A stretch of 64,000 nucleotides of DNA from IMGVR_UViG_3300030419_004471:124001-188000, one strand, 5' to 3'. Numbered from the stretch's first letter, positions 3,597-63,883 are shown. Program-made: numbers and translations. The notes: generated from the letters alone by a model not told the origin.

Positions 3597-3604
3597 TATA
3601 AATA
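3597..3604 (-). promoter_or_regulatory. putative late promoter TATTTATA
   Basis: + strand tataaata, 16 nt upstream of the 3580 start; recurrent motif. Confidence 0.6.
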
Positions 3605-3631
3605 TAAAGAATGTGAAGAAAATGTATATAT

Positions 3632-4684
3632 TTAGTTATTTATGCCACCTCTTGAAGAACCTCCAGAACTTCCTCCACTTGATACTCCACCGCTTGAACC
3701 TCGTGATGAACCTCCACTACTAACACCACTTGAACTTCCTCTACTAAAATTATTTGAACTTCCTCTACTGAAAGAATTAGAAGAGTTATTGATATTTGGA
3801 ATGGATGGTCTGGAGTTAATAGTGTTATTCCAATTATTAACTGGTCTACTATTATTGTTATTATTGTTAATAGGAACTACTGGTCTACCATTATTATATC
3901 TAATAACATTATTATTAGGTACATTATTTGGATTATTATAAACTCTAACATCATTAAACCTATCTCTTAATCTATCAACAATATTATCAATAACATTATT
4001 ATTATTGTTATTATTGTTATTTACATTATTTCTTGGTTTGTTATATCTTGTACTGATTAGGTTTTCTATATTACTATTACCATTATCTATAAATCTACTT
4101 CCTCTTCCTCCTCTAACATATGCAATATTTGTATTTTCTCTACTAGAATTCCAAATTACATTGTACCCTGGATTACCCCAAGGCCCATTGTACCAATTGT
4201 TCCATGGTCTGTAAGGTCTGTGCCAATTCCAAGCCCATCCATAATTCCAATTGTTCCATCCCCAATTATTATATCCCCATCCATAATTAAAGAATGGATA
4301 GTTAAATGCCCAATCATTCCAAAATTGATATCTATTCCAATAAACATCAAATGCTGTATATGGTCTCCAATAGCTAAAACTGTAGTTAGATGTGTACCAA
4401 CTATAAGGTTGGTCCATAGCATATTGTGCAAAATCCCATCTGAATCTTGAATCTGTTCTTAGTTTCCATCTTAATTGAGAATAAGATAAGGTATCTATTT
4501 TTACATCACTTGGTACTTCTAATGCTACTTCATGCGGCCCATATAATGGGTCGTGATACATAGTTGATAATTTAAATGATGCACATCCTGTAAATAAATT
4601 TAGTATAATCAATCCAGCTATTACACCAAGTACCTTAGCTATTGCATCAGCGTAACGTGTTGATTTTTTCTCTGATTGTGTCAT
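3632..4684 (-). CDS. lipoprotein with W/Y/N/G-rich and N/S/G-rich low-complexity tail
   Basis: LFTGC lipobox; GWGYNNWGWNNW segment; poly-N runs; RGSS repeats. Confidence 0.7.
   Translation of the reverse strand: MTQSEKKSTRYADAIAKVLGVIAGLIILNLFTGCASFKLSTMYHDPLYGPHEVALEVPSDVKIDTLSYSQLRWKLRTDSRFRWDFAQYAMDQPYSWYTSNYSFSYWRPYTAFDVYWNRYQFWNDWAFNYPFFNYGWGYNNWGWNNWNYGWAWNWHRPYRPWNNWYNGPWGNPGYNVIWNSSRENTNIAYVRGGRGSRFIDNGNSNIENLISTRYNKPRNNVNNNNNNNNNVIDNIVDRLRDRFNDVRVYNNPNNVPNNNVIRYNNGRPVVPINNNNNNSRPVNNWNNTINSRPSIPNINNSSNSFSRGSSNNFSRGSSSGVSSGGSSRGSSGGVSSGGSSGGSSRGGINN
3730..3769. repeat. 16-bp direct repeat ttgaacttcctctact (encodes SRGSS)
   Basis: Copies at 3730-3745 and 3754-3769. Confidence 0.75.
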
Positions 4685-4922
4685 TTAGTACCTCCTTTTC
4701 CAATTCGTTAATTCTATTTAAAATTTTTGAAATATCTTCACGAGTAGTTTTTATTGTACTCCTAATCTCTTTCCATTCTTTAATAGTATTTGTTGTATCT
4801 TTATCTATTTCTGATAAACTTACACTTTTCGTAGTATCGTTATTTGTTTGATTCTCTTCTTTAATAACATCACTACAGGACAATCCTAACATTGTTAGTA
4901 GTCCCAGTAAAAAACATTTCAT
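4647..4922 (-). CDS. small coiled-coil lipoprotein (possible o-spanin-like)
   Basis: LGLSC lipobox; heptad-rich C-terminus. Confidence 0.5.
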   Translation of the reverse strand: MKCFLLGLLTMLGLSCSDVIKEENQTNNDTTKSVSLSEIDKDTTNTIKEWKEIRSTIKTTREDISKILNRINELEKEVLNDTIREKINTLR

Positions 4923-4939
4923 ATAATCTAATCTTTACC

Positions 4940-4947
4940 TATAAATA
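4940..4947 (-). promoter_or_regulatory. putative late promoter TATTTATA
   Basis: Motif 17 nt upstream of 4922. Confidence 0.6.
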
Positions 4948-4954
4948 TAAGATT

Positions 4955-5485
4955 TTAGTGTTTTATGTGTTGTACTCTCCACTTTACATCCTTATTTCGT
5001 AGCATTCTTTTAGTAACATCTACATTCTTTTTAGAATCATCTGCGAAGTAAACATCATCATAGCCCTCATTATCAATCTTATCTTCAATCCAATCAGCTT
5101 TATCCTTTGGATTATTAGATGCTAATGCGGTTACATAAATCTTACTCATATTAATACCAATATCTTTGAGGTATTGTCTAATTGGTTTGTATGCAGCTCG
5201 TGCGGTTAGAATGTAAACTCCATCACCTCCACTACTACTAACAATTCTTCGTAGAACCGAAGTTATCTTTTTTATCTCGTTTGGATTCTGAACCTTTTCA
5301 AAATCTTTAAAATCAAATTCATCACCTGGTTTCTCTTTGTACACTGCGTATTGACCTGGTGTTAGTTTTCTTGTCTTACCTTTATTGGTAACATAAATAT
5401 ATGATGTGGTCTTTACCAGAGTATCATCAAAATCAAATACTCTGAGTTTTTTTGATTCCACAAATAAACTTCTTAATAATACCAT
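4955..5485 (-). CDS. HAD-superfamily phosphatase
   Basis: VFDFDDTL motif I, ILTAR motif II, K, YFADD motif IV. Confidence 0.8.
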   Translation of the reverse strand: MVLLRSLFVESKKLRVFDFDDTLVKTTSYIYVTNKGKTRKLTPGQYAVYKEKPGDEFDFKDFEKVQNPNEIKKITSVLRRIVSSSGGDGVYILTARAAYKPIRQYLKDIGINMSKIYVTALASNNPKDKADWIEDKIDNEGYDDVYFADDSKKNVDVTKRMLRNKDVKWRVQHIKH

Positions 5486-5489
5486 ATAC

Positions 5490-5497
5490 TATAAATA
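5490..5497 (-). promoter_or_regulatory. putative late promoter TATTTATA
   Basis: Motif 4 nt upstream of ATG at 5485. Confidence 0.6.
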
Positions 5498-5499
5498 TA

Positions 5500-5889
5500 T
5501 TACATAAATAGTTTGTAATTCTTTTCTTCGTTAACTGCTTCTATTTCATATGGATGAGTAGTATAATCATGTCCATATTTATCATAATATCTTTTAAACC
5601 AAGTAGGTGATTGTAAGTAGTGAACGTATTCGTGGATAAGAGTTTGAATAATCATTTTTCTACTTTTCATCTGAGGATAGTAAACACTAATCTCATTCAA
5701 CATTGAACAATACTCAGCGTGACATTTATCTTCTTCACCTTGAGCACCATCTTCACCACTATATTTTTCGTAGATGTTTTTGTGAAGTTCTATATAAGGA
5801 GTACATTCTTGGAATTTAGAGAACCCATAGTGCTTCTCAATCTTAGGATAAACTTCATCGATGATTTTTAACACTTTATCTTTAGTCAT
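5500..5889 (-). CDS. zincin (HExxH) metallopeptidase-like protein
   Basis: TLIHEYVHYLQ...HPYEIEA. Confidence 0.75.
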   Translation of the reverse strand: MTKDKVLKIIDEVYPKIEKHYGFSKFQECTPYIELHKNIYEKYSGEDGAQGEEDKCHAEYCSMLNEISVYYPQMKSRKMIIQTLIHEYVHYLQSPTWFKRYYDKYGHDYTTHPYEIEAVNEEKNYKLFM

Positions 5890-5905: not shown

Positions 5906-5938
5906 GTAAATATACGAAAAAAAATTGAATTATCCAAG
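5906..5938 (-). promoter_or_regulatory. Bacteroidota-type early promoter (TTGGA...CGTATATTTA)
   Basis: One of eight conserved two-box intergenic copies. Confidence 0.7.
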
Positions 5939-5957
5939 GATTTTGGTGGATTTTTTA

Positions 5958-7627: not shown

Positions 7628-8857
7628 TTATCTAAATGTATAGTTTATTCCAAATGTTGAATTAAAGAATTTAGTATCCCACATTTTATTGTATTCACCT
7701 TCAGCAAAAACTCCTAAATTCTTACCTATTTTCCAACCAAAGTTGATACCAAATTGATAATCTTCCCATTGTTCACCTTCTGCATCTTGTACCAATCCAC
7801 CTTTACCCCAATTGTTTCTGTTTAAGTAAGAGAAATCTTCATCTCCTTTAACATATTTGTGATATCCTGGTAGATAGTTTGCGTATCCGTGAAACCAAAA
7901 GTTATTCTTATAATGATAGAAATCAGCTCCTAAGATTGGTGATACAACACCGAATGGGTCTATACTATCCCAAATTTCATTATTATATCTGTTAATAAGG
8001 TCTCTGAATACTGTGTTTCTAAAATCTAAATCTGAATGTGCTACGATATTTCCTTGTTCATCTCTCCAAATCCAATCAAATCTTTCATTACCAGTTTCTA
8101 AATCAGTATAAGTTGTTGCGTGGTCTGTGTATCCATACTCGTATCCTAAAGAGTACCAAGGATTAGCTGGATATTCTTCCCCATCAATTATTTGAATTTC
8201 ATTTAACCAAATTTCAATCGGGTTATATCCATATGCTCTAGTGTGAGTTCTATATATTGCTCCAGCTGATAAACTAAATTTCTTACCAATTGGTAATCTA
8301 GCTCTTACTTCTGCTGATTTATATTCGAAATCAAATGCACCTTGGCTTCTTGATTCTAACTTAACAATATGATTTTTACCTGTGTGTCTAATAAAATACC
8401 TAAAGTTATTCCATTCTTCACCTCTAAGTCTTTCCTTTTCAAAGTGAAATAAATATTCAAATCCTTGAACTGCTGATGTTGGTGCGGATAATGCTTGTTG
8501 ACTTTCTCTGTATTGATTACCTGTCCAGAAGTTACCTGGTTTTCTTTCGTATTGAAATCTTCCTAGTTTACGGATACCTATTCCATATCTGTAATCAAAT
8601 GGATAATATTCTGTTACTTCTATAACTCTTGGTATAGCGTACAAATCTCCATCAGCTGGTCTTTCTACAAAGAAATCTTTTCTTGAGTTTTCATATGCAT
8701 TTCTGATATCACCGGCTGCATAAATTGTTCCGTATTTTAAGAAGTCATTATAGAACTCTTTAAATATATTCTTTTTTACTTTCGTTTCTTCTATTTCTTG
8801 GGCATTAACATTAAATGAAAGTAATAAACTTAACATTAATAATAGTAAATTTCTCAT
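7628..8857 (-). CDS. outer-membrane beta-barrel protein
   Basis: Signal peptide; alternating amphipathic strands; C-terminal FGINYTFR beta-signal. Confidence 0.7.
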   Translation of the reverse strand: MRNLLLLMLSLLLSFNVNAQEIEETKVKKNIFKEFYNDFLKYGTIYAAGDIRNAYENSRKDFFVERPADGDLYAIPRVIEVTEYYPFDYRYGIGIRKLGRFQYERKPGNFWTGNQYRESQQALSAPTSAVQGFEYLFHFEKERLRGEEWNNFRYFIRHTGKNHIVKLESRSQGAFDFEYKSAEVRARLPIGKKFSLSAGAIYRTHTRAYGYNPIEIWLNEIQIIDGEEYPANPWYSLGYEYGYTDHATTYTDLETGNERFDWIWRDEQGNIVAHSDLDFRNTVFRDLINRYNNEIWDSIDPFGVVSPILGADFYHYKNNFWFHGYANYLPGYHKYVKGDEDFSYLNRNNWGKGGLVQDAEGEQWEDYQFGINFGWKIGKNLGVFAEGEYNKMWDTKFFNSTFGINYTFR

Positions 8858-8891
8858 TTTTTCTCCCTAATTTTATAAGGTTATATTTGTA

Positions 8892-8899
8892 TATAAGTA
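8892..8899 (-). promoter_or_regulatory. putative late promoter variant TACTTATA
   Basis: + strand tataagta upstream of 8857. Confidence 0.5.
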
Positions 8900-8920
8900 T
8901 TAAAAAATAACCAAATCGTG

Positions 8921-9583
8921 CTATATTTTGTTTTCTATATCACTTTTTATGTATTGAAATAACTTTTTACCTATCTTTTCTCCAAAATCCTTATCAGAGG
9001 AATAATGTGCTCTAGCTATAAGTCTACTTTTTGATATATCCTTACCTGCGTTGATAAATTCATTTCGTAATCTACCTTTATCGTATTTTTCTGCTAAATA
9101 TAATCCTATTAATGTACCCTGAACTGCATGTCCTGAGGGATACGATGGTGTTTTCATAGAGGAAAGTATTACCTCTGCTAACTTCATATTATATTCTTGT
9201 GCTAATTTGCCTGGTCTTGGTCTATTAAAGTGATATTTTAGGTCTAAAATAATACCAGCTGAATCATCCATTAACTTTTCCACCATTTCTTTTGGAAACT
9301 CAACTCCATTTTTTTTACAAACTTTTTCAAAAACATCATCAATTTCATCATTTTCTACAACAAAGTTTTTATCTTCAGGTAATTTTTGTAAGGTTTTTAA
9401 TTCATTATATGTTTGTAGTGATTCATTTTTTGGTGGATGAGCATCTTTAAATTCTGAATAATCTAAATCACTAAATAGTCCATTTTTAACCTTATCTATC
9501 TTTTTTTGATGTTTAGGCTTGATGGAATCTGAATGCTTTAGATTCTTAATTGATACTATGTTTTCAAATGTATATACAAACAT
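8921..9583 (-). CDS. PAP2/haloperoxidase-fold acid phosphatase
   Basis: K..FNRPRP, PSYPSGH, SR...AHY.SD motifs. Confidence 0.85.
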   Translation of the reverse strand: MFVYTFENIVSIKNLKHSDSIKPKHQKKIDKVKNGLFSDLDYSEFKDAHPPKNESLQTYNELKTLQKLPEDKNFVVENDEIDDVFEKVCKKNGVEFPKEMVEKLMDDSAGIILDLKYHFNRPRPGKLAQEYNMKLAEVILSSMKTPSYPSGHAVQGTLIGLYLAEKYDKGRLRNEFINAGKDISKSRLIARAHYSSDKDFGEKIGKKLFQYIKSDIENKI

Positions 9584-9586
9584 ACC

Positions 9587-9594
9587 TATAAATA
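9587..9594 (-). promoter_or_regulatory. putative late promoter TATTTATA
   Basis: Motif 3 nt upstream of ATG at 9583. Confidence 0.6.
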
Positions 9595-9780
9595 TTACTT
9601 TTTAAAGTAATTCCAAATATCTATAGCTTTTGAAGTGATTTTTTCTGTTGCGTTACCAACTTTTTTTGAGATTTGTTTTGCGATTGGAGTAGGTAATACC
9701 TTTTCTAATTTCTTTTTGGCTTTACCCTTTGCGATTAAACCTGCACCTTTTTCGATTATTTTTTCTTTTAGCTTTCCCAC
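9595..9780 (-). CDS. small basic hypothetical protein
   Basis: GTG start with late motif 3 nt upstream (9784-9791). Confidence 0.55.
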   Translation of the reverse strand: MGKLKEKIIEKGAGLIAKGKAKKKLEKVLPTPIAKQISKKVGNATEKITSKAIDIWNYFKK

Positions 9781-9802
9781 AAATATAAATATACTCAGTA
9801 TA

Positions 9803-10690
9803 TTATTTCCATAATCCCATTTCGGAATTACATCCTGCTTCTGCTATTTTTTTAAATTCTTCTCTTCTATCTATGCCAGGTACAAAATCTGTAAGATGTT
9901 TGTTATTTCTGTATTTATAGTTTTCACAAACTACTAAATTTTTTATTTTGAATTGAATTCCTTCTTTGTGATGTTCACACCACCACATTATATATGTATC
10001 TTCTAAACCATAGTGTCCAAATGATTCAGGAACAGTCACCTTATCTAATAGTTCTTTAGATAAACAAGTAAACCAACCACCAGCAAATTTCATTCTTGGT
10101 TGTCCTATCACATTATTATTTACTGTTTCTATTCCAATGTTTCCATTCTTAATCCCACAATCTACAAATGGGTCATTTGTTTTTTGATAACCTAATGGTT
10201 CATTTAGGTATTGTTCATTTACTAAACAATCCCAAGTTGAATCCCATATACGAACTATTTCAGGAGTAACCACCGATAGTGGATACTTATCTTTTATAGA
10301 TTTAATAGAACTATCAATATAAGCAAGAGTTCTTTCATCGAATATGATATCTGTATCTAACCAAATATGATAATCTACATCTTTGTGAGTTTTCCAAGTT
10401 TTTCTTCTTTTCGATACACAACCCAAAACTTCTGATTTATCTTCAACTCTAAAGTATTTGTTAGTAATCCAATCTGATTGTTTTCTAAGTTTATCAAACT
10501 TACCAAAAAAGTACTCCATAGGAATTTTACTATTTTCCCATAACGTTAATTCACCAGTTAATGCTAATGTTATATCTAAAATAAAATCTTTTTCATCGAT
10601 ATAACGAAATGCTTTTTGTAGTTGAATTAATGTTAATTCTAAATCATCTATCTCGTGTGGTAAACAAAATATGGAAATACAATACTTCAT
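9803..10690 (-). CDS. GT-A fold glycosyltransferase
   Basis: WLDTD DxD motif, GGWF, YGLED. Confidence 0.7.
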   Translation of the reverse strand: MKYCISIFCLPHEIDDLELTLIQLQKAFRYIDEKDFILDITLALTGELTLWENSKIPMEYFFGKFDKLRKQSDWITNKYFRVEDKSEVLGCVSKRRKTWKTHKDVDYHIWLDTDIIFDERTLAYIDSSIKSIKDKYPLSVVTPEIVRIWDSTWDCLVNEQYLNEPLGYQKTNDPFVDCGIKNGNIGIETVNNNVIGQPRMKFAGGWFTCLSKELLDKVTVPESFGHYGLEDTYIMWWCEHHKEGIQFKIKNLVVCENYKYRNNKHLTDFVPGIDRREEFKKIAEAGCNSEMGLWK

Positions 10691-11085
10691 TATGCGTTAT
10701 AATCTACTTTAGTCCATTTATCATCTGAATCCATTCTGAAAGAACCTACATAAACTTGATTCCATTCATCAGGTGCTATTAGAGATAAGAATAGAGTTTC
10801 ATCTTTTTGTTGGTATAAATGATAAGTATGTCCTTTAATTGGTTCAAATCTAAACTCACTATTATATACTAACTTGTTCCACTCATATGCTTCTAATAAC
10901 TTTCTATACTCTTCTTTTATCTCTTCATAACGTGCTTCGAAGTAATGATTTGTCTTAATTAAGTTCTTTTGTTTGTATGAAGATATATCTGTTGTTCTAA
11001 TAGCTGGTGCTCCGACGTGGTCTCCATAAGGCATTATCGCCTTATTCTCTGCAAACATATCTGGTTTCTTTTTCTTTTTAGCCAT
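10690..11085 (-). CDS. DUF2452 family protein
   Basis: PYG..VGAPAI, FEPIKGHTYHLY, LSLIAPDEW. Confidence 0.75.
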   Translation of the reverse strand: MAKKKKKPDMFAENKAIMPYGDHVGAPAIRTTDISSYKQKNLIKTNHYFEARYEEIKEEYRKLLEAYEWNKLVYNSEFRFEPIKGHTYHLYQQKDETLFLSLIAPDEWNQVYVGSFRMDSDDKWTKVDYNA

Positions 11086-11311
11086 TACATTCACCATTAA
11101 CTATACAAGAATTATCCCAACCATCCTTCTGTGCATAACAAGAGTTCATATAAGTTGTTCCATCTGGTGCACATACTGGTTCATATATCTCTATACATAC
11201 AGCTCCTTTTGTATATTCTCCCTTAACACAAGTATCATCCTCTTCTTGACAAGATGTTAATAAAAACATTAGAAGCATAGAAGTCCAAAATGTTATTAAT
11301 ATATTTCTCAT
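11078..11311 (-). CDS. Kazal-type protease-inhibitor lipoprotein
   Basis: LTSC lipobox; CIEIYEPVCAPDGTTYMNSC Kazal signature; terminal GEC. Confidence 0.8.
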   Translation of the reverse strand: MRNILITFWTSMLLMFLLTSCQEEDDTCVKGEYTKGAVCIEIYEPVCAPDGTTYMNSCYAQKDGWDNSCIVNGECNG

Positions 11312-11787
11312 ACAACTACAACTAATTTTTTAGCTCCTTCAAATCCATACTTTAAACTATAAGTAAAAAGAAAATCACCAATTATTGTATTAACAAAAAA
11401 TGGTAATGCTAATACATAGCAACTTATTAATCCTTCTACTGTATGTGGGTATCCTAATAAGAAAACTCCAAAATTTGTAATTAAAAAGAACAATAATGAA
11501 CTACTAAATATTACTTTATTTGAAATTCTTTTAGAATTCATACCAATTAAAGATATTAACATAAATGATAAATAAACAAATATCGATATACTACTAAATC
11601 CTAAAAATAAATCAGATAGCCCCATACATAATAAAGGTAGTCCAAATGCTAACCATTTATTATCAAATCGGTTTCCACCAAATAAAGCTATTGCTGTTAT
11701 TGGAGCAACGTTAGGTGGGTGTGGTAATAATCTTGCTAATAATGCCAATACTATTAATAATAATACAACTTTATTTTTACTTATCAT
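11308..11787 (-). CDS. DUF6580-like membrane protein (ECF S-component-like)
   Basis: RLLPHPPNVAPITAIALF; FFLITNFG; multiple TM helices. Confidence 0.7.
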   Translation of the reverse strand: MISKNKVVLLLIVLALLARLLPHPPNVAPITAIALFGGNRFDNKWLAFGLPLLCMGLSDLFLGFSSISIFVYLSFMLISLIGMNSKRISNKVIFSSSLLFFLITNFGVFLLGYPHTVEGLISCYVLALPFFVNTIIGDFLFTYSLKYGFEGAKKLVVVV

Positions 11788-13541: not shown

Positions 13542-13551
13542 AATTTATTTT

Positions 13552-24224: not shown

Positions 24225-24225
24225 C

Positions 24226-25965: not shown

Positions 25966-25985
25966 AATCTCTTTTATTTGTTATA

Positions 25986-26003
25986 TATAAGTATATATAA
26001 ATA
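25986..26003 (-). promoter_or_regulatory. tandem late motifs (TATTTATA and TACTTATA) heading the glycan island
   Basis: + strand tataagta 25986-25993 and tataaata 25996-26003. Confidence 0.55.
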
Positions 26004-26022
26004 TAAGAAAATTATAAAAACA

Positions 26023-26880: not shown

Positions 26881-26896
26881 ATACTAATTTGTTATA

Positions 26897-26928
26897 TAAA
26901 TATACAAAAAATTCCTGAGAAATCCAAA
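26897..26928 (-). promoter_or_regulatory. Bacteroidota-type early promoter
   Basis: TTTGGA...TGTATATTTA; shares aaaaattcctgagaaatccaaat with the 38006 copy. Confidence 0.7.
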
Positions 26929-36058: not shown

Positions 36059-37279
36059 TTATCTTCCTACTTCTTTTAAATAATTGTTTTTCATTGTTTC
36101 CCAATCCATACCAATAGCATCTATATAAAATAAATGTTCTGGTTTCAATCGATTAGAATCATATAACTTTGTATATCTTTTTATGGCTTGTCTTTTCCAC
36201 CACTTATTAATGTAATCAACTCCCTCTTCAAACTTCTTTTTCATCTTTAAATCTTTTTCTTCAATTTCTGAACGAAGAAATTCTGGTCCGTTTTCATACA
36301 TCATAGCAAGATACACTCCTCTTTTGAATCCGTGATGGTAATCAGCTGCTCTGATACCACATTCTTTAAAGATTCTTCCTAAAATCTTTTGTTTAATACC
36401 ACTAACAGGTCCTTGTCGTTGAGATTCAGCTCCATACATATTAGCTCCGTTTCTTTTTCTTTCTTCTGTAATATGTTCTTTATACCAATCCTCTCTGTTT
36501 TCTTTTAACCATTGGTGCCACGGGTCATAAAATTTATCATCAGGTTTAATTGCTATCTTACCAGCAGATTCCCCTAATGTTTTAAAATGTGGAATACCAT
36601 TATATTGAGAATGAATACCATATAAAGAAGTTGTACCAACACCAATTAGAGTTTGTCCATATTTCTTTTTCCAAAAATCTCTAATTTCAGGTACAGTAGT
36701 CATCATCGCTGTAAGTTTACCACCTAAGAAATTATATCCTAATGGTTGTGTACATACTATCGTAGAAGCGATTGTTGTATAATTTAACTTACCCTTTTTA
36801 AACTTATCTTCTTTATTCCATCCTATGTATTTATCTCTAACACCCATCGATGTAACATCAGATGCTAAAGATATCATACCCAGCAATTTACCACTTTTCT
36901 TATCCTTAACAAAAACTTTAACATTTCTACCAGGGTTAGCTGTCCAACTCATTGTATGAATCATCTTTCTAAGATGTGTCCATTTTGTAGCTTCTTTAGT
37001 ATCTTCTACAATTTCAACGTATGGTTCTAACTCTTCAATTTCTTTTATTGTAAGTTCTTTATCATTAATATCTGTAGGTCTCCATTGCCAATCATAATAA
37101 GATGCTATAGCAGATTTATCTCTAATCATAGAATCTCCTTGCAACTCTACCCACTTTTTATATAAAGTTTGTTCCTCTACAGACATCTGCATAAGATAGT
37201 CCATATTCTCAATGAGCTTTTTCTTCTCATCTTCGAATACAAATTGAGGTTTAGCTGGTTCGGTATCCCAAAAACTCAT
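36059..37279 (-). CDS. DUF4338/Druantia DruA-like protein
   Basis: PGR, RD.YIGW, QPLGYNFLGGKL, TTSLYG..SQYN, G.KRGVY. Confidence 0.72.
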   Translation of the reverse strand: MSFWDTEPAKPQFVFEDEKKKLIENMDYLMQMSVEEQTLYKKWVELQGDSMIRDKSAIASYYDWQWRPTDINDKELTIKEIEELEPYVEIVEDTKEATKWTHLRKMIHTMSWTANPGRNVKVFVKDKKSGKLLGMISLASDVTSMGVRDKYIGWNKEDKFKKGKLNYTTIASTIVCTQPLGYNFLGGKLTAMMTTVPEIRDFWKKKYGQTLIGVGTTSLYGIHSQYNGIPHFKTLGESAGKIAIKPDDKFYDPWHQWLKENREDWYKEHITEERKRNGANMYGAESQRQGPVSGIKQKILGRIFKECGIRAADYHHGFKRGVYLAMMYENGPEFLRSEIEEKDLKMKKKFEEGVDYINKWWKRQAIKRYTKLYDSNRLKPEHLFYIDAIGMDWETMKNNYLKEVGR

Positions 37280-37974
37280 TACTTAATCTCTACTAAATAA
37301 TAATTTGATGTATAATCTCCGTCCTCAAATGAAAGATGTGCTAATCCTTTAGATGAAATTTTTAATGAAGATGATTTTGAACCTTTGTTAGCTATAAGAA
37401 TAGCTTTTAGATATTTAGCTGAAAATGCTATAGGTTTTATATCATTATCACATTTACAATTAACATCAATACTAATTCTATTTGAATTAATTGATGAATA
37501 ACCTAAAATGATTTCACCTTTGTTTTTTGTACAAGTAAAAGTAAATGTATCTGCATCTGCTAATGCTCCTTTTGATTTGATAAATTTATTTACAAACTCA
37601 TCATCTAATGTTACCTCAGAATCAAATTCAGGTAATGCCTTTAAATCAGGTACAGCAGGTATAACAGATGGAGCAGCTAGCATATATTGTACTTTCGTAC
37701 CCTTATCACTAAATTTAAGAGCTCCTGTTACCTCTTCTACTTTTATTGATGAATCTAATACACTTAACAATCCTCTCAATTGAGAAGTTGTATAAATACC
37801 AAATTCACCACTAGGAAACTCACTATCTTTCACAGATACGTTTCCTAATAATGTCTTATCATCAGAAATCATTCTGACTGACATTGAATCATCAGTAGAG
37901 TTCATCATTACTGATTCAACCTCGCCACCGAGATTATATCGATTTATGAACCCATCTAATTTTAATTTTTCCAT
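37279..37974 (-). CDS. 45: DNA sliding clamp (gp45-like)
   Basis: EFGIY motif, PCNA-like two-domain pattern, replisome context. Confidence 0.75.
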   Translation of the reverse strand: MEKLKLDGFINRYNLGGEVESVMMNSTDDSMSVRMISDDKTLLGNVSVKDSEFPSGEFGIYTTSQLRGLLSVLDSSIKVEEVTGALKFSDKGTKVQYMLAAPSVIPAVPDLKALPEFDSEVTLDDEFVNKFIKSKGALADADTFTFTCTKNKGEIILGYSSINSNRISIDVNCKCDNDIKPIAFSAKYLKAILIANKGSKSSSLKISSKGLAHLSFEDGDYTSNYYLVEIK

Positions 37975-38005: not shown

Positions 38006-38037
38006 CAAATATACGAAAAATTCCTGAGAAATCCAAA
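38006..38037 (-). promoter_or_regulatory. Bacteroidota-type early promoter
   Basis: TTTGGA...CGTATATTTG (-33 TTTG, -7 TAnnTTTG). Confidence 0.75.
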
Positions 38038-41284: not shown

Positions 41285-41363
41285 AATTTACTCCTTTTAA
41301 GTGTTAATATAATTTTAAATTTTACAGTTTAGTTTGAGATGCGTTTCTTACATCCGGTGTATA

Positions 41364-41371
41364 TATAAATA
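41364..41371 (-). promoter_or_regulatory. putative late-type promoter TATTTATA
   Basis: Motif about 80 nt upstream of the gp32 start. Confidence 0.5.
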
Positions 41372-41415
41372 TAACAAACTTCCAAAAACCACCGATATTT
41401 TTAGAGTTTTTTTAA

Positions 41416-45991: not shown

Positions 45992-46023
45992 CTAATATAC
46001 GAAATTATTTTGAATTATCCAAG
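45992..46023 (-). promoter_or_regulatory. Bacteroidota-type early promoter for the nuclease-GT-polB unit
   Basis: TTGGA...CGTATATTAG. Confidence 0.7.
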
Positions 46024-46047
46024 GAAAAAGTGAAGTTTTTTTCAGTT

Positions 46048-46443: not shown

Positions 46444-46500
46444 AAATCTTTCTTCCGATTTTTATACACCTATAAGTATTAATCGCAAAAAGATTAATTA

Positions 46501-48525: not shown

Positions 48526-48537
48526 CTATAAATATCC

Positions 48538-49170: not shown

Positions 49171-49219
49171 AATCTATCTTTACTTGTAATCACTTCTAAT
49201 ATATAAATATTAGATTTAT

Positions 49220-52829: not shown

Positions 52830-52861
52830 CAAATATACGAAAAATATTTTAATTTTCCAAA
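52830..52861 (-). promoter_or_regulatory. Bacteroidota-type early promoter, probably leaderless
   Basis: TTTGGA...CGTATATTTG ending 4 nt before ATG 52825. Confidence 0.72.
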
Positions 52862-54190: not shown

Positions 54191-54222
54191 CAAATATACG
54201 AAAAATTATTGAAATATCCAAG
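54191..54222 (-). promoter_or_regulatory. Bacteroidota-type early promoter
   Basis: TTGGA...CGTATATTTG. Confidence 0.75.
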
Positions 54223-54239
54223 GAAAAAGTGAATTATTT

Positions 54240-55137: not shown

Positions 55138-55169
55138 TAAATATAGACAATTTTTAGGAAAAATCCAAG
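55138..55169 (-). promoter_or_regulatory. Bacteroidota-type early promoter variant, probably leaderless
   Basis: TTGGA...CTATATTTA just upstream of GTG 55134. Confidence 0.55.
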
Positions 55170-55175
55170 GAAAAT

Positions 55176-58655: not shown

Positions 58656-59459
58656 TTACCAAGCTTTACAACTCCAATATCTAGCCTTATGTCTTGGGCC
58701 TGGATTATCACAATTGTGTCTTGCTCTGAATGCTTTTCTTCTTGAAGGAATATCTTTTTGAATCTGCATTGTTTTTTGACCTGCTTTTTTTGCGGAAGTT
58801 CCACCGTGTCCAAAGTTTACTTTTACTACATTTCCTTTTGGATTTTTTACATATACTTTAAATTTCTTTACATCACCTCTCATTGGTTTGTTTAATTTAA
58901 CTTTTCTTCCTTGATATTCTGCTTCATTGATTTCAGATTTTAAAGTTTTCATAAATTCTATAAATTCTTTTATATCTTGCTGATTAACAACATCATATTC
59001 ACCGATTTGTTCTTTTTTCCAACCACCACCAGCTGCTTTATATTTTTTAGCTGCCCAAGCATTTGCATAAGCTGATGGATATACATCAAACTTCTTTTTA
59101 GCTTGAGATTTATAATAAGACCATTTAGATGGATTTGTTGGTACATTTTTTTCTAAAAATAATTCTAATTTTTCTTGTATTTCTTTTTTTGTCTTTACCA
59201 TAATCGGTTTCCTTCCTTGTCCTGGTTGGTTTTTACCACCTCTACCAGCTTTGTTTTGTGCTGCTCTTTTTCTACGAGTTGCAGATTCTTTTTCTTTCTT
59301 ACTCATACTACGAGCTTTACTAGCAGGAACACATTTTGCATATCCCCTTTTGTCTCCACTTGTTCCACATTCAGGATGTTTTCCTGATTTATCTTTTTTT
59401 CCAATGTTTACCCATTTCTGTTTAAACCACTTTCTTAAATCTTCGTGTACACTATGCAT
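58656..59459 (-). CDS. multi-module basic protein (C-terminal DUF6321-like); likely head-associated
   Basis: EDLRKWF..KWV; YPSAYAN; EAEYQGRKVKLNKP...ARYWSC, with modules separated by x-x-E. Confidence 0.65.
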   Translation of the reverse strand: MHSVHEDLRKWFKQKWVNIGKKDKSGKHPECGTSGDKRGYAKCVPASKARSMSKKEKESATRRKRAAQNKAGRGGKNQPGQGRKPIMVKTKKEIQEKLELFLEKNVPTNPSKWSYYKSQAKKKFDVYPSAYANAWAAKKYKAAGGGWKKEQIGEYDVVNQQDIKEFIEFMKTLKSEINEAEYQGRKVKLNKPMRGDVKKFKVYVKNPKGNVVKVNFGHGGTSAKKAGQKTMQIQKDIPSRRKAFRARHNCDNPGPRHKARYWSCKAW

Positions 59460-59751
59460 TACTAGTCTCCTTTCTTACAATTTCTGTAAAATCTTTTGGT
59501 ATTCTTAAAATAGTACCATCTGTTAATCCTAACTTAGCATCGTGTATATTATTAGCGTTAGCTATAATCCACCAATAAGCAGGAGTTCCATAATATTGTT
59601 TTGATAATAAATCTAATCTATCACCAGTTTGTGTAGCAACATATATATCATCATTCTTTAAAGGTATTCTTTTTAACCTCTTAGATTTATATACAGTCTT
59701 TCCATCTGTACTCTTTTTTGTTATATTTTTGTGATATCTACTAATTGCCAT
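59452..59751 (-). CDS. LysM baseplate wedge protein (gp53/tail X-like)
   Basis: GDRLDLLS..YYG...WWIIA.AN...G..LRIP; late motif at 59758-59765. Confidence 0.8.
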   Translation of the reverse strand: MAISRYHKNITKKSTDGKTVYKSKRLKRIPLKNDDIYVATQTGDRLDLLSKQYYGTPAYWWIIANANNIHDAKLGLTDGTILRIPKDFTEIVRKETSNA

Positions 59752-59765
59752 TTTTATTATAAATA

Positions 59766-61460
59766 TTATCCACTTGTATTATATGTTAAAGGTGTAAACC
59801 CATATAAATTTTCTCTTCTTTCAGTATTTCTTCTTTGTTCTAAAAACTTCATTGTTATTGAAACTTCTACTAAATGTGGTAATTTGTATCCTTTTTCTAC
59901 TGTTGGTACATTTTTTACACCAGCTTTTTCAAAAAATGCAGCACTTGATTCATATTCTTTAACTTGTTCTGTAGTTCCATCTAACTGCCAATTAGAATTA
60001 TCAGGAACAGTATATTGTAATGATTCAATAAAAGCTTCTCTCTTTTTATATAAATCACCTAAAGTAAAATATAAAAGTGGTGCTCTTACTGAACCAATTG
60101 AAGATTGATAACCTGATTTAATATCTGGATTACCTAATGGATATGTTAAAGATGTTAAAAATCCAATCTTACTCCAATTATTAAGTAATTCTTTTGAATT
60201 CATTGGATATATTGTAAAATTAAAAGTAACACTTCTTTCTACACCATCATATGTGTAAAAATTAAATGGGTTACCACTAAATTTAGCTCCTGCCCAAGAT
60301 GGAGATACCGTTTCTGAAAGTCCTGTAATAGTTCCTCTGAAGTTTACAGTTTCATCAGTAACAACACTTTGAAATTTTAATGGTACAAAATCCCAGTCAT
60401 CTATTGATTTATTATTAATTTTTAAATCTTCTGAAGTATAGATTCCAGTTTGATTTATTGCATCATCTGTGTTTGTAAATCCTTTATCAGAAATTAATTT
60501 GTTTCCTAACTCATCCTTCTCAGTACTGAATTTATTTTCTTCATTAAACTTTACTGAATCAACATTTGTTTTTATATTAACACCTTCTGCTCCATCTTTT
60601 GTTACTTGTTTACCAAGAGCGTCTTTCCCAGTAACTTGTACATATCCTTTTCCAACTCTTAAAGCAGCTAATTGGGCTTCAGGTGTTTCGTATTTGATGT
60701 AAGTACTACTTTTTTCATCTATATTTAATTTATTTTCTAATGCTTTTTCTGAATATGTAGTACCTGTTACACTTTCAAAAATACCAGGTGATGGTTTTGT
60801 CTCTTTTTCCTTATATGGTTCTTTTTTACCAAATCTACTTTTTAAATTATTTTTAAAACTACTATCATTAAATAATGTATCTCTAAGTGTATCCTTTGCT
60901 TCTTTTAGTAATTTACCAGCTGCTTGTTGAGCAATTGTCTTTGGAGTTCCACCACTTAATAGTCCACCAATAAAACTTCCTTGTGCACCTCTTTTTATTT
61001 TTATTAGTCTTTCTTCATAACCTGATTGAACACCAAGCGTTGGGTCATTTAGTGTACCACCACGACCAAATTTATCACTAGCTTTTGTTACTGCATCATT
61101 AGCAAGTTTTGCTAATCCTTTTAATTCATCACCATCACCACCACCAGCTTTTTTTGTATATGAACTTGGTATAAGAGTTTGAGGTACACCTAATGTAGAG
61201 TTAACTACAGTTCTTAGATTTTTTATCGTACCACCAATTAAACCACCATCACCTTCATCGGTACGCATCTTATCCATATCAGGTGTTGAACGAAGAGCTA
61301 TACGAGTAGCTTCGTTGCCATATATTAATGGATTGTTAAGTTCTACTGCAGATTTTACTCTAACACCAGTAAGTTCTTGCTCAACACCAGTCAATCTATC
61401 TGGTTTTACTTGTTTATCTAATCCTGCTCCCCTAAATAATTCTAATATTGTTCTTCCCAT
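59766..61460 (-). CDS. baseplate/tail-tube-initiator-like protein
   Basis: FRGTITGLSE..SPSW...Y.Y.G.ERSVTFNF...P.....LGD; follows tape measure. Confidence 0.65.
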   Translation of the reverse strand: MGRTILELFRGAGLDKQVKPDRLTGVEQELTGVRVKSAVELNNPLIYGNEATRIALRSTPDMDKMRTDEGDGGLIGGTIKNLRTVVNSTLGVPQTLIPSSYTKKAGGGDGDELKGLAKLANDAVTKASDKFGRGGTLNDPTLGVQSGYEERLIKIKRGAQGSFIGGLLSGGTPKTIAQQAAGKLLKEAKDTLRDTLFNDSSFKNNLKSRFGKKEPYKEKETKPSPGIFESVTGTTYSEKALENKLNIDEKSSTYIKYETPEAQLAALRVGKGYVQVTGKDALGKQVTKDGAEGVNIKTNVDSVKFNEENKFSTEKDELGNKLISDKGFTNTDDAINQTGIYTSEDLKINNKSIDDWDFVPLKFQSVVTDETVNFRGTITGLSETVSPSWAGAKFSGNPFNFYTYDGVERSVTFNFTIYPMNSKELLNNWSKIGFLTSLTYPLGNPDIKSGYQSSIGSVRAPLLYFTLGDLYKKREAFIESLQYTVPDNSNWQLDGTTEQVKEYESSAAFFEKAGVKNVPTVEKGYKLPHLVEVSITMKFLEQRRNTERRENLYGFTPLTYNTSG

Positions 61461-63562
61461 TATTCTCGTTCTCCGTAATTGTTAGATTGGCTTCTTGATA
61501 CTACTTTAGAAACCCCGTCTGTAACTTTTTTACCATCCATATTTACAACAACCTGTAAATTTCTAATATCTTCACCTAAAGTATTTATAGCTGCTACTAC
61601 TGCTCTATTATCTCCACCACCTCCACCTCTATTACCAAATAAACCACCAAATAAACCTGGAGCTGCTACTAAATCATCATTATCCGATAATTGGAACAAT
61701 CCTCCTTCTTTAGTAGATACTTGTGTTTTACCATCAGCAGGAGATGCCATATCACCAGCTTCACCATATAGTTTACTAAATCCAGTTCCTATAATAGCGG
61801 CTGCTGTAGCAGCACCCAAAATCGGTCCTACTATTGGTATCCAAGCTAATGCACCATATGCTGCATATGCAGCCATTAATATCATAGCTGCTGCCACCAA
61901 TTTTATCATTCCCGCAAAAGGGCCTAAAGCATCTGCCCATCCTCTAATATAGTCTGCAACAGTTCCAACCATAGTAATCATCGAAGTAAAAAAACCTACT
62001 ATACCACTAACAACCCACATTACTCCTTCTAAAGCTGGCATAACACCTTCCATTATTGGTGCAAATGCCAATACTAATTGAGTACCTATTTCTGAAAATG
62101 AGTTCGCTACATTATCTAATACTGATTGCATTTCTTTTTGGTCTTTAATTTTTTGTGTTTGATTTGCTAAATCAGTTTTTGAAATATTATTTAAATCTTT
62201 ACCAGAAGCGATAAGTGCATCATAAGCAGCTTGTTGGTCTGCATTCATTTTACCAAACTTTTGCCTTACATTAAGTTGATTTTGTATTTCACTAAACTCC
62301 ATACCAGCAGCTTCAGCTAATTTCTGCTTTTGGAAGTAATTTAAATTATCTAAATCAATTGTACCTTGTATTTGGTCTAATACTGCTTGTTGTGATTTAA
62401 CTATATCACCAGTAGCTGCTAATTCTCTAGCTCTGTTAAAATTAACTGATTGTCCTAACATAGCAGATGCTTCTAATTCAGCGTTAATACTATTATTAAA
62501 ATCTAATAATCCTTCTGCTACTTTAGATGCCTGACCTATTGATGTTCCTAATCTTGCTGCTTGAACTGCTGCTTTGGTTAAATCTTGTACTGAACCTGAG
62601 AAATGCATTGCTGCTGCTTCTGAGTTTTCAGCTATATCTTTTATTACTTTTGATGGAGCTACTCCAGCAGCTGCAGCTAATTGTGTAGTAAATTCAACTT
62701 GATATTGTGCAGCTTCGGCAGATAATCCTCCTAATTGTTGGAATATAGAATTTAATTTTGCTCCATCTGCAGCTGCTACTCCGAAGTTCTTTTCCAATGC
62801 AACTGTACTTTCTAATACTTCTTTTGATGGTTTTCCTATTCCTTCAAATTCATTAATAAATGCTGCAGCTGCCTTACCCACATCTTCCATTGATGCACCT
62901 AAACCTGCCGTACCTTTTGTTACTGCAGCTATATCACCTTTTAATCCTTTAGTTTGGGAGTTTAATAAACCTGTTTCTTCTCTAACTGCCTTTGCAGCTC
63001 CTTCTAATTTTTGAAACCCAACAAAAGCTAATGCTAATGCCGCGAGTAATCCCATAGCAATAAACATAGGTCCTAATTTTGCAAGCATACCTGACATTGA
63101 TTTTAATGAAGCAGTTCCTCCTGCTACACCAGCTCGAAAAGATTTGAAGAATCCAGCCCCTCCTTTTTGTGCAGCTTGAAATGATGATGTAAATCTACTA
63201 CTGAATCTATGTGCAGCTACATCAAATACTCTACCTGCTTTTGCTGCAAATGGGTCAAATACTTTTCCTAATGATGTACCAATTACTGGAACATCTTTTA
63301 CCATATCGCCTATTTTTTCTAATCCAGCTTTGAATCCTTCTGCTGTTTCTTTTGCTTTTTTATTTACAGATGTTAATACTGCATTTTGTTGTTTAGTTGC
63401 TTTAAGAGCTGCTCTAAGGGCTTTAGCTTTTTCTATTTGATTTTTCTTAACGGCACCACTAGTTTTTTCTATAATTTTCTCACTTGCTAAAATTTCAGCA
63501 TTAAGTGAAGAAATCTGTTTTAAGTTTTCTATTTGCCCTATGTAGTCTTGTTCTCTTGCCAT
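61460..63562 (-). CDS. tail tape measure protein
   Basis: Long Ala/Gly-rich helical protein with hydrophobic stretches; C-terminal V.MDGKKV. Confidence 0.82.
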   Translation of the reverse strand: MAREQDYIGQIENLKQISSLNAEILASEKIIEKTSGAVKKNQIEKAKALRAALKATKQQNAVLTSVNKKAKETAEGFKAGLEKIGDMVKDVPVIGTSLGKVFDPFAAKAGRVFDVAAHRFSSRFTSSFQAAQKGGAGFFKSFRAGVAGGTASLKSMSGMLAKLGPMFIAMGLLAALALAFVGFQKLEGAAKAVREETGLLNSQTKGLKGDIAAVTKGTAGLGASMEDVGKAAAAFINEFEGIGKPSKEVLESTVALEKNFGVAAADGAKLNSIFQQLGGLSAEAAQYQVEFTTQLAAAAGVAPSKVIKDIAENSEAAAMHFSGSVQDLTKAAVQAARLGTSIGQASKVAEGLLDFNNSINAELEASAMLGQSVNFNRARELAATGDIVKSQQAVLDQIQGTIDLDNLNYFQKQKLAEAAGMEFSEIQNQLNVRQKFGKMNADQQAAYDALIASGKDLNNISKTDLANQTQKIKDQKEMQSVLDNVANSFSEIGTQLVLAFAPIMEGVMPALEGVMWVVSGIVGFFTSMITMVGTVADYIRGWADALGPFAGMIKLVAAAMILMAAYAAYGALAWIPIVGPILGAATAAAIIGTGFSKLYGEAGDMASPADGKTQVSTKEGGLFQLSDNDDLVAAPGLFGGLFGNRGGGGGDNRAVVAAINTLGEDIRNLQVVVNMDGKKVTDGVSKVVSRSQSNNYGERE

Positions 63563-63575
63563 AGTTAGCTATTAC

Positions 63576-63836
63576 TTATTTTATTCCAAATTGTTTCATA
63601 GCTTTTGCTAACGCTGGAGATGGTTTTAAACCTTTGGCTTTCATCTTAGCGGTTGCTTTTTTTAAATCATCTAAAGCTTTATCACCATCTGCTAAAGCTT
63701 GTTGAAGTGATTTATCTTTAGCCAATACTTTTTGAATTTTTCTTTTGAAAAAATTAACTAAAAATCCTTCTCTTTTTAGATTGTGTTTTTTAACAATATT
63801 AGAGAATAGTATCTTATCGTTTTCGTTTATTTTCAT
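63576..63836 (-). CDS. hypothetical protein
   Basis: AGGAG RBS; late motif at 63870-63877. Confidence 0.65.
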   Translation of the reverse strand: MKINENDKILFSNIVKKHNLKREGFLVNFFKRKIQKVLAKDKSLQQALADGDKALDDLKKATAKMKAKGLKPSPALAKAMKQFGIK

Positions 63837-63883
63837 AGTTTTTCTCCTTTGTGGGTATTTTTATACAACTATAAATATAAAGT

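What the first reader, a model, noticed from the sequence alone, without database searches (positions are those of the whole stretch)
3597..63877. Late-promoter motif that is the reverse complement of T4's TATAAATA
Seen: about 12 intergenic + strand TATAA(A/G)TA copies (3597, 4940, 5490, 8892, 9587, 9784, 25986/25996, 41364, 46471, 48527, 49202, 59758, 63870). All lie just upstream of minus-strand genes, so the coding strand reads ATA(T/C)TTATA. Several are only 3-6 nt from the start codon. Known: T4 gp55 reads TATAAATA on the coding strand. Inference: a divergent late sigma factor with inverted specificity, producing many leaderless late mRNAs.
Basis: partly seen in the sequence, partly recalled or inferred. 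Interest (0 to 1): 0.6.

Follow-up and report, generated by a model that had tools for sequence, protein, structure and literature searches.

The report
Variant late promoter of T4-like phage
The repeated ATA(T/C)TTATA(T/G) boxes in front of the genes of this 214-kb marine T4-like phage are most likely its late promoters, read by a very divergent T4 gp55-type sigma factor, so this is a new sequence variant of a known system, not an "inverted" one.

Summary
All 14 listed copies exist, plus one missed at 26895. The window's 2.5 kb of intergenic DNA holds 15 copies in gene orientation (0.9 expected) and none in the opposite orientation. Genome-wide (213,601 bp, nearly all genes on the minus strand) there are 42 intergenic copies against 3.9 expected. 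The real unit is a 10-mer, A-TA(T/C)TTATA-(T/G), with no -35 element.

It precedes tail sheath, tail tube, portal, adaptor and baseplate genes, and some DNA-metabolism genes. A second, longer host-type motif (TTGG-N19-TATATTTG) precedes the DNA polymerase, clamp, primase and small-ORF early region.

The box recurs before orthologous genes in Flavobacterium phage immuto, phage Mel-JY01 and about 80 metagenomic relatives.

The genome, outside the window, encodes a 243-aa protein that I assign to the gp55/sigma-region-2 family. No direct family scan detects it. Support comes from profile comparison, scans of family members and a fold match to T4 gp55.

"Inverted specificity" is not needed: TATTTATA differs from TATAAATA at two central bases. 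Only 5-9 of 42 sites are close enough to the start codon for leaderless mRNA. No start sites were mapped, so timing and +1 are inferred. New variant of a known kind.

The parts
63869..63878 (-). Late-type box ATATTTATAG, 33 nt before gene 63576-63836 (86 aa); terminator hairpin plus T-run 6 nt upstream
59757..59766 (-). Late-type box ATATTTATAA, 6 nt before ATG of gene 59452-59751 (baseplate wedge, gp25-like)
49201..49210 (-). Late-type box ATATTTATAT, 31 nt before gene 48538-49170 (nuclease)
48526..48535 (-). Late-type box ATATTTATAG, 1 nt before a GTG or 14 nt before the first ATG of gene 46501-48525 (674 aa, unknown)
46470..46479 (-). Late-type box ATACTTATAG, 27 nt before gene 46048-46443 (131 aa, conserved in both relatives; immuto ortholog also has the box)
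41363..41372 (-). Late-type box ATATTTATAT, 79 nt before gene 40457-41284 (single-strand DNA binding protein, gp32-like)
26894..26903 (-).
25985..26004 (-). Two tandem late-type boxes (ATATTTATAT and ATACTTATAT), 30 and 20 nt before gene 25771-25965 (64 aa); the upstream one overlaps an early-type TTGGAA-N-TTATATTTA arrangement
9783..9792 (-). Late-type box ATATTTATAT, 3 nt before a GTG of ORF 9595-9780 (61 aa; start uncertain)
9586..9595 (-). Late-type box ATATTTATAG followed by GT-ATG: 3 nt before gene 8921-9583 (220 aa); candidate leaderless mRNA
8891..8900 (-). Late-type box ATACTTATAT, 34 nt before gene 7628-8857 (409 aa)
5489..5498 (-). Late-type box ATATTTATAG, 4 nt before ATG of gene 4955-5485 (polynucleotide-kinase-like)
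4939..4948 (-). Late-type box ATATTTATAG, 17 nt before gene 4647-4922
3596..3605 (-). Late-type box ATATTTATAG, 16 nt before gene 2330-3580 (416 aa)
54191..54223 (-). Early-type (host-like) promoter CCTTGG-N19-TATATTTG before gene 53271-54170
52830..52860 (-). Early-type promoter TTGG-N19-TATATTTG before gene 51548-52825 (divergent PolA-like protein)
45992..46024 (-). Early-type promoter before the operon 45466-45972 / 44326-45456 / 41813-44326 (gp43-type DNA polymerase)
38006..38036 (-). Early-type promoter before the sliding-clamp operon
5907..5939 (-). Early-type promoter before gene 5500-5889
37279..37974 (-). gp45-type sliding clamp gene (231 aa); in T4 the clamp activates late transcription
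   Evidence: phrog_223, E 3e-14

Best explanation
The boxes are the late (or middle-and-late) promoters of a distant T4-like phage from a clade that infects Bacteroidota. Each is a single 10-bp element on the coding strand, A-TA(T/C)TTATA-(T/G), with no -35/-33 partner.

The proposed reader is host RNA polymerase core carrying a phage sigma factor. That factor is a 243-aa protein encoded outside the window at G000:C1:64691-65422 (minus strand). Its N-terminal half is a sigma region-2 domain most like T4 gp55. The gene sits in an operon headed by one of the phage's early, host-type promoters (TTGG-N19-TATATTTG).

The inferred programme is as follows. Host sigma-A transcribes replication genes and the new sigma factor. 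The new factor then redirects the polymerase to about 40 boxes in front of virion genes and some nucleic-acid enzymes.

Transcription probably starts 3-4 nt after the box, closer than the 6 nt of T4. For the subset with box-(G/T)GT-ATG, the mRNA would then begin at the A of the start codon and be leaderless.

Shown here: the motif, its strand and place bias, its conservation before orthologous genes, the two promoter classes, and the remote homology of the sigma protein. Inferred: promoter activity, timing, which protein reads the box, the position of +1, and any dependence on the clamp.
For: - Enrichment and polarity: 42 intergenic copies against 3.9 expected in gene orientation, and 3 against 5.4 in the other orientation. 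Flanking A (41/42) and T/G (39/42) are conserved. There is no upstream element.
- Downstream genes include tail sheath, portal, head-tail adaptor, a tail-fibre-region gene and gp25-like baseplate wedge. The major head gene has no box of its own.
- A distinct long motif precedes the DNA polymerase operon, the clamp, the primase, the small-ORF region and the sigma operon.
- 9 of 42 boxes follow a terminator hairpin plus T-run by 3-31 nt.
- Conservation before orthologs in Mel-JY01 and Flavobacterium phage immuto: odds ratio 11, p = 3e-5. Tail tube and portal carry the box in all three phages; tail sheath carries it in this phage and immuto.
- In 80 IMG/VR loci holding the sigma ortholog: 140 intergenic copies in gene orientation against 24 reverse. 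In the closest 26 loci: 78 against 4.
- In relatives with about 50% sigma identity, the order terminator, then cTATTTATA, then the same downstream gene is kept.
- In Mel-JY01, a minus-strand operon carries the box flipped with it.
- Sigma protein: colinear BLASTP to T4 gp55, E 0.008. hhalign of its family against a gp55 alignment gives 92.7% probability, E 4e-7, 144 columns. 5 of 53 family members hit phrog_234 'late sigma transcription factor'. 12 of 53 hit Pfam Sigma70_r2. The AlphaFold model has pLDDT 90. Its best structural match is T4 gp55 in the open complex, 7d7c_F: Z 10.6, rmsd 4.6 A, 119 residues. The following matches are other sigma-2 domains.
- A gp45-type clamp is present.
- Start-site hint: purine at the 4th base after the box in 33/42 (p 0.0045, uncorrected), preceded by pyrimidine in 25/42.
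- Precedent for co-diverged late promoter and gp55: Aeromonas phage Aeh1, with CTAAATA (PMC1524935).
Against: - No transcription start site or time-course data. The only RNA libraries holding the phage are assembled metatranscriptome contigs inside the tail-sheath gene, which cannot show starts.
- The sigma protein itself gives no hit in PHROGs, Pfam or a PDB profile search. The assignment rests on family-level and fold evidence. Z values near 10 for helical domains are not decisive alone.
- No gp33 homolog was found.
- The box also precedes non-structural genes (SSB, nucleases, kinase), so 'late' may be too narrow.
- About half of the boxes also fit a host-like TAnnTTTA reading.
- In one sub-clade (sigma about 57% identical) the sampled loci rarely carry the box.
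Confidence: 0.72

Rival explanations
1. The boxes are host sigma-A promoters consisting of a -7 box only: (T)A-TA-TTTA, a G-to-A variant of the Bacteroidota TAnnTTTG. They are weak alone and are perhaps switched on by a phage activator, not by a new sigma factor.
For: - The phage's own early promoters carry TATATTTG/A, which shares ATATTTA with the box.
- In Flavobacterium psychrophilum the sigma-A -7 box lies at -12 to -5 (PMC9723704). That register would also put +1 three to four nt after the box.
- 20 of 42 sites have the T that completes TAnnTTTA.
Against: - The T of the would-be TA is present in only about half the sites. The three bases beyond TTTA (T, A, then T/G) are invariant or nearly so, and sigma-A does not explain this.
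- The C variant (TACTTATA, 7 of 42) breaks the TTT of the host box.
- There is no -33 element.
- The two motif classes partition by gene function.
- A conserved gp55-like sigma is encoded and co-occurs with the box across the clade.
Confidence: 0.14
2. The motif acts in RNA and not as a promoter, for example as a processing or cleavage site or a translation signal in polycistronic transcripts.
For: - It is strand-specific and lies in transcribed-looking gaps between co-oriented genes.
- Some copies are very close to start codons.
Against: - The distance to the start codon varies from 1 to more than 100 nt.
- Nine copies sit directly behind intrinsic terminators, where little read-through RNA is expected.
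- Architecture and copy number match T4-type late promoters, and a cognate sigma candidate exists.
Confidence: 0.05
3. The boxes are genuine T4-type TATAAATA promoters on the + strand that drive antisense transcripts into the preceding genes.
For: On the + strand 35 of the 42 intergenic copies read exactly TATAAATA, the T4 consensus.
Against: - 7 of 42 read TATAAGTA.
- There is a recurrent fixed 3-nt spacing to minus-strand ATGs.
- The boxes sit downstream of minus-strand terminators.
- The box keeps gene orientation in relatives whose genes are on the other strand, and flips with a minus-strand operon in Mel-JY01.
- Almost no genes lie on the + strand for such promoters to serve.
Confidence: 0.03

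Closest known systems
Bacteriophage T4 late transcription (gp55 sigma, gp33 co-activator, gp45 sliding clamp; promoter TATAAATA at -13 to -6)
   Same: - About 40 copies of one short, nearly invariant AT-rich -10-type element with no -35 element.
- The element lies in front of virion genes.
- The phage encodes a gp55-like sigma-2 domain protein and a gp45-type clamp.
- Early genes use host-type promoters.
   Different: - The box is TATTTATA, not TATAAATA (positions 4-5 are TT, not AA). It extends to a 10-mer with a fixed A before and T/G after.
- The coding-strand T4 box occurs once in all intergenic DNA.
- The sigma is 243 aa, not 185. It has an extra conserved C-terminal helical domain of unresolved fold and is undetectable by the gp55 family model.
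- No gp33 was found.
- The spacing to ATG in five to nine genes is too short for T4's 6-nt box-to-start distance.
Variant late promoters of other T4-like phages (Aeromonas phage Aeh1 CTAAATA; A/T at -13 in RB49, KVP40, S-PM2), as compiled in PMC1524935
   Same: The late box drifts together with a diverged gp55, while architecture and gene targets stay the same.
   Different: Those variants change the 5' edge of the box and keep the central AAA. Here the centre is changed, and the hosts are Bacteroidota and not Proteobacteria or cyanobacteria.
Bacteroidota sigma-A promoters (-33 TTTG, -7 TAnnTTTG at -12 to -5; PMC9723704)
   Same: - The phage's early-type motif TTGG-N19-TATATTTG fits this pattern.
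- The late box shares ATATTTA with it.
- That register would place +1 three to four nt after the box.
   Different: The late box has A where the host has G, needs three further fixed bases, tolerates C inside the T-run and has no -33 element.
Two-domain alternative sigma factors (group 4/ECF and phage-encoded ones)
   Same: Full-length structural alignments to sigma-E, sigma-H, SigI and WhiG cover both halves of the model.
   Different: - The C-terminal domain alone scores only Z about 5 against sigma region 4, no better than unrelated helical proteins.
- No -35-type element accompanies the box.

Membership tests
T4-type late promoter system | Single short AT-rich -10-type element, highly conserved, with no -35 element | tested here: met
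   10-mer with 9 invariant or near-invariant positions. No upstream k-mer or positional signal.
T4-type late promoter system | Consensus TATAAATA on the coding (non-template) strand | tested here: not met
   The coding strand reads TA(T/C)TTATA. Coding-strand TATAAATA occurs once in 10.9 kb of intergenic DNA.
T4-type late promoter system | Phage-encoded gp55-family sigma factor | tested here: met
   Remote homology only. hhalign 92.7%, E 4e-7. 5/53 relatives hit phrog_234 and 12/53 hit Sigma70_r2. Best fold match is T4 gp55, 7d7c_F, Z 10.6. Direct family scans of the protein itself were negative.
T4-type late promoter system | gp45-type sliding clamp encoded | tested here: met
   Window 37279-37974, phrog_223, E 3e-14.
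T4-type late promoter system | gp33 co-activator encoded | tested here: inconclusive
   phrog_254 gives no hit in the genome. gp33 is small and fast-evolving, so absence is not shown.
T4-type late promoter system | Located upstream of virion (late) genes | tested here: met
   Tail sheath, portal, adaptor and gp25-like wedge by family scans; the tail-tube ortholog by position next to the sheath gene. Conserved before orthologs in two relatives. Also found before some DNA-metabolism genes.
T4-type late promoter system | Transcripts start about 6 nt downstream, appear late and depend on replication and the clamp | not testable with these tools
   Only assembled metatranscriptome contigs were available.
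Bacteroidota sigma-A promoter | -7 box TAnnTTTG with a -33 TTTG about 19-21 nt upstream | tested here: not met
   The late box lacks the G, the -33 element and, in half the sites, the T of TA. The separate early-type motif does meet it.
Sigma-70 family protein (the 243-aa candidate) | Region 4 helix-turn-helix domain | tested here: inconclusive
   The C-terminal domain model (pLDDT 81) matches sigma region 4 chains at Z 4.5-5.4, no better than unrelated folds. No Pfam r4 hit among 53 relatives.

The most novel reading that the evidence does not exclude
A large, globally abundant marine clade of T4-like phages of Bacteroidota has replaced the T4 late box by ATAYTTATAK, read by a re-specified and enlarged gp55-type sigma. 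This sigma has an extra C-terminal domain and possibly no gp33. The box sits closer to the start point than in T4, so a set of late genes, including a 1,528-aa virion-size protein, is transcribed as true leaderless mRNA starting at the A of AUG. That would be a route to translation in hosts whose ribosomes largely ignore Shine-Dalgarno sequences.
Probability: 0.3. Interest if true: 0.6.

Novelty: new variant of a known kind. Interest (0 to 1): 0.45.

Why it matters
The motif gives a ready rule for annotating late operons in a very common but almost unstudied group of marine phages. The sigma family has about 3,000 clusters at 90% identity and 1,391 representatives at 50% identity in public data, none with a functional name.

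It also gives a natural pair, a changed -10-type box and a changed gp55-type sigma, for asking how sigma region 2 specificity evolves.

It makes the idea of promoter-embedded leaderless starts in Bacteroidota phages testable, because a cultured relative exists (Flavobacterium phage immuto). It does not overturn anything known about T4-type regulation.

Tried and rejected
- Direct searches of the genome for gp55 (phrog_234, phrog_12791), Sigma70_r2 (PF04542) and gp33 (phrog_254) found nothing. The same gp55 search in Mel-JY01 found nothing.
- A profile of the candidate sigma against PDB sequences found nothing.
- Foldseek E-values were all weak, 0.03 or worse, although the list was nearly all sigma factors.
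- The C-terminal domain folded alone gave no decisive match.
- The predicted complex of the clamp with the sigma C-terminal tail gave no verdict. It is not used as evidence either way.
- RNA evidence: one seawater metatranscriptome holds short contigs of the tail-sheath gene at 99% identity or more.
- Searches for a -35/-33 partner of the box (k-mers, TTG/TTTG positions) found none.
- Other promoter-like candidates among the conserved small proteins turned out to be HNH endonuclease, primase, baseplate wedge and similar.
- The search for related loci with the 53-sequence alignment failed for lack of a conserved stretch. The 8-sequence alignment worked.
- Literature searches for the box, for Mel-JY01 and for late promoters of Bacteroidota T4-like phages found no prior description.
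- The chance or AT-rich background explanation is rejected by the simulations.
- No genetic code other than table 11 was used.
Full report
**What the window is**

The window is bases 124,001-188,000 of a 213,601-bp virus record, rated 100% complete by CheckV. GC content is 31%, and almost every gene lies on the minus strand.

The genome encodes T4-type core proteins:
- a gp43-type family-B DNA polymerase;
- a gp45-type sliding clamp;
- a gp46-like nuclease and a tail sheath;
- a gp23-type major head protein, portal, large terminase and adaptor;
- an SSB and a gp25-like baseplate protein;
- a primase.

By capsid protein, its nearest relatives in the phage collection are an uncultured 484-kb phage, 'Microcystis' phage Mel-JY01, Flavobacterium phage vB_FspM_immuto and, more distantly, Rhodothermus phage RM378. 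This is a T4-like clade whose cultured members include phages of Bacteroidota-type hosts (Flavobacterium, Rhodothermus). A preprint groups immuto and related 155-190 kb phages by a divergent PolA that they share. The window's gene 51548-52825 is the ortholog of that gene.

**Checking the observation**

The window-wide count on both strands is what shuffling predicts: 27 against 25.9.

With strand and place taken into account the result is clear.
- In the window, 15 copies in gene orientation fall in 2,527 intergenic bases, against 0.9 expected (maximum 6 in 500 simulations). No opposite-orientation copy is intergenic.
- In the genome, 42 intergenic copies are seen against 3.9 expected, and 3 opposite copies against 5.4 expected.

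Aligning the 42 sites shows a longer unit. There is an A before the box in 41/42 and a T or G after it in 39/42. The only internal variation is T/C at the third position. Upstream there is only loose T-richness. A strict matrix converges on 38 perfect 10-mers, ATAYTTATAK. From the intergenic base frequencies I estimate that fewer than one is expected. No -35 or -33 partner was found.

**Where the boxes sit**

They precede the tail sheath, the tail-tube ortholog, portal, head-tail adaptor, gp25-like wedge and several large unknown proteins of the virion region. They also precede an SSB, a nuclease, an exonuclease, an HNH endonuclease and a polynucleotide-kinase-like gene. Nine follow a terminator hairpin and T-run by 3-31 nt.

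**A second promoter class**

K-mer enrichment of intergenic DNA revealed a second, longer, strand-specific motif with about 20 copies: aaaTAATTcacTTTTTCCTTGGAT-N-TTTTCGTATATTT(G/A). It can be read as TTGG-N19-TATATTTG. That fits the Bacteroidota sigma-A pattern, in which the -7 box TAnnTTTG lies at -12 to -5 in Flavobacterium psychrophilum (PMC9723704).

This class precedes the DNA polymerase operon, the clamp and clamp-loader operon, the primase/gp46 region, the divergent PolA, the block of small ORFs outside the window, and the operon holding the sigma candidate. The two classes thus divide the genome much as early and late promoters divide T4.

**Conservation in relatives**

- In immuto, 24 of 36 TAYTTATA copies are intergenic. 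In Mel-JY01, 16 of 36 are. Both phages have genes mainly on the + strand, and the copies are in gene orientation.
- Presence of the box before a gene here predicts its presence before the ortholog there: 13/22/4/76, odds ratio 11, p = 3e-5. Tail tube and portal carry the box in all three phages; tail sheath carries it here and in immuto.
- A minus-strand operon of Mel-JY01 carries the box in flipped orientation.
- In 80 IMG/VR loci fetched through the sigma candidate, intergenic copies run 140 in gene orientation to 24 reverse. In the 26 closest loci the figures are 78 to 4.
- In relatives with only about 50% sigma identity, the sigma gene is followed by a terminator hairpin, then cTATTTATA, then the same downstream gene.
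- One intermediate sub-clade rarely shows the box in the sampled stretches. This is unexplained.

**Who reads the box**

Family models for gp55 and for sigma region 2 found nothing in the genome. I then looked among proteins conserved in all three phages. One 243-aa protein drew attention (L008:8691-9422, minus strand; genome 64691-65422). It contains a KGKAFSYFTIIAKNYLI segment that looks like sigma region 2. It lies third in an operon behind an early-type promoter.

- Its own family scans were empty.
- BLASTP aligns residues 19-89 colinearly with T4 gp55 residues 18-92, E 0.008.
- The family is very large and unnamed: 2,977 clusters by word search and 1,391 representatives at 50% identity.
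- A 53-member alignment matches a six-member gp55 alignment by hhalign at 92.7% probability, E 4e-7, over 144 colinear columns from the N-terminus.
- Scanned singly, 5 of the 53 hit phrog_234 'late sigma transcription factor', 2 hit another phage sigma family, and 12 hit Pfam Sigma70_r2. No other family was hit by more than two (PHROGs) or one (Pfam) of the members.
- The AlphaFold model (pLDDT 90) has T4 gp55 in the late open complex as its best structural match: 7d7c_F, Z 10.6, rmsd 4.6 A, 119 of 137 residues. Sigma-2 domains of many other sigma factors follow.

I take this as good, though indirect, evidence for a gp55-type sigma. The C-terminal 120 residues are as conserved as the N-terminal half, but their fold is unresolved. 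Sigma region 4 chains appear only at Z about 5, among unrelated proteins. No gp33 was found. A clamp-tail complex prediction gave no verdict.

**Geometry and the leaderless question**

In T4 the box spans -13 to -6 (PMC1524935). Here nine sites lie 1-6 nt from the called start. Five of them have exactly box-(G/T)GT-ATG. Two of those five begin ATGGCA, as many genes of this phage do. With T4's spacing, transcription would begin at the G of the ATG.

Across all 42 sites, the fourth base after the box is a purine in 33 (p 0.0045, uncorrected), and the third is a pyrimidine in 25. This is a weak hint of a Y(-1)R(+1) start. That start point would coincide with the A of ATG in the 3-nt class. It would also match the host register if ATATTTA is aligned with TAnnTTTG.

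Leaderless transcripts for this minority are therefore plausible but unproven. Most of the remaining boxes lie 14-44 nt upstream, some before GGAG-like sequences.

**Verdict on the interpretation**

'Inverted specificity' is not a mechanism. In the same register, TATTTATA and TATAAATA differ at two central positions, and the reverse-complement relation follows from that. Variant late boxes paired with diverged gp55 are already known, for example Aeh1 with CTAAATA (PMC1524935).

I found no earlier description of this particular box or of this sigma family. I rate it a new variant of a known kind, of moderate interest.

**Limits**

There are no start-site, timing or binding data. Gene calls are my own longest-ORF calls. 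Several start codons are uncertain, especially the GTG starts at 9780 and 48525. The host of this particular phage is inferred from relatives and from the early-promoter pattern.

Noticed in passing
window 54191-54223, 52830-52860, 45992-46024, 38006-38036, 5907-5939 (minus strand); variants near 55138-55170 and 28815-28847; about 12 more outside the window: A second, much longer conserved intergenic motif: aaaTAATTcacTTTTTCCTTGGAT-N-TTTTCGTATATTT(G/A). It looks like a Bacteroidota sigma-A (-33/-7) early promoter with an A/T-rich upstream element. It also occurs in immuto and in most related IMG/VR loci.
   Followed up: partly
window 25985-26032 (minus strand): Before the 64-aa gene 25771-25965, an early-type TTGGAA-N-TTATATTTA arrangement overlaps the first of two tandem late-type boxes. 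This may be a promoter used in both phases.
   Followed up: no
window 51548-52825 (minus strand): A 425-aa protein with a weak DNA-polymerase match. It is the ortholog of immuto gp001 and is probably the divergent PolA ('divPolA1') described for immuto-like phages in bioRxiv 10.1101/2024.04.26.591309. Here it sits beside a regular gp43-type PolB and behind an early-type promoter.
   Followed up: partly
window about 9803-25617 (minus strand): A run of about 22 tightly packed or overlapping genes (glycosyltransferases, a HAD-hydrolase fusion and others) with neither promoter motif inside it. It looks like one long auxiliary sugar or modification operon, and it is partly shared with Mel-JY01 and immuto.
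   Followed up: no
genome G000:C1:63007-64722 (minus strand), outside the window; also L042-L093 just after the sigma gene: In this phage and many relatives, a 571-aa gene is inserted directly after the sigma gene. From memory its N-terminus resembles carbamoyltransferases; this was not checked. In immuto, Mel-JY01 and others the sigma gene is followed at once by the late box and a baseplate-region gene.
   Followed up: no
whole genome compared with L026-L034 (immuto): GGAG/AGGA-like sequences 4-18 nt before start codons occur at 19% of genes here and 24% in Mel-JY01, but only 5.5% in Flavobacterium phage immuto. Inside-gene control windows give 12% here and 17% in immuto. Either the hosts differ in Shine-Dalgarno use, or some late genes keep such sites.
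   Followed up: partly
L026-L034 (immuto), for example 120597, 131296, 145346: Many immuto boxes read cTATTTATAAATAAA, so a T4-type TATAAATA overlaps the TATTTATA box 4 nt downstream on the same strand. This phage does not show the overlap.
   Followed up: no
L075-L097 (IMG/VR relatives, sigma about 57% identical): These loci keep the early-type motif but almost never carry TAYTTATA in their intergenic DNA. Their late box, if any, may differ, which would be a possible case of sigma-promoter co-variation.
   Followed up: partly
L013:7477-9559 (tail sheath gene, outside the window): One seawater metatranscriptome (coded run X1) holds contigs of 150-250 nt at 99% identity or more within the tail-sheath gene. 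The phage or a near-identical strain is therefore present in an environmental RNA library.
   Followed up: partly
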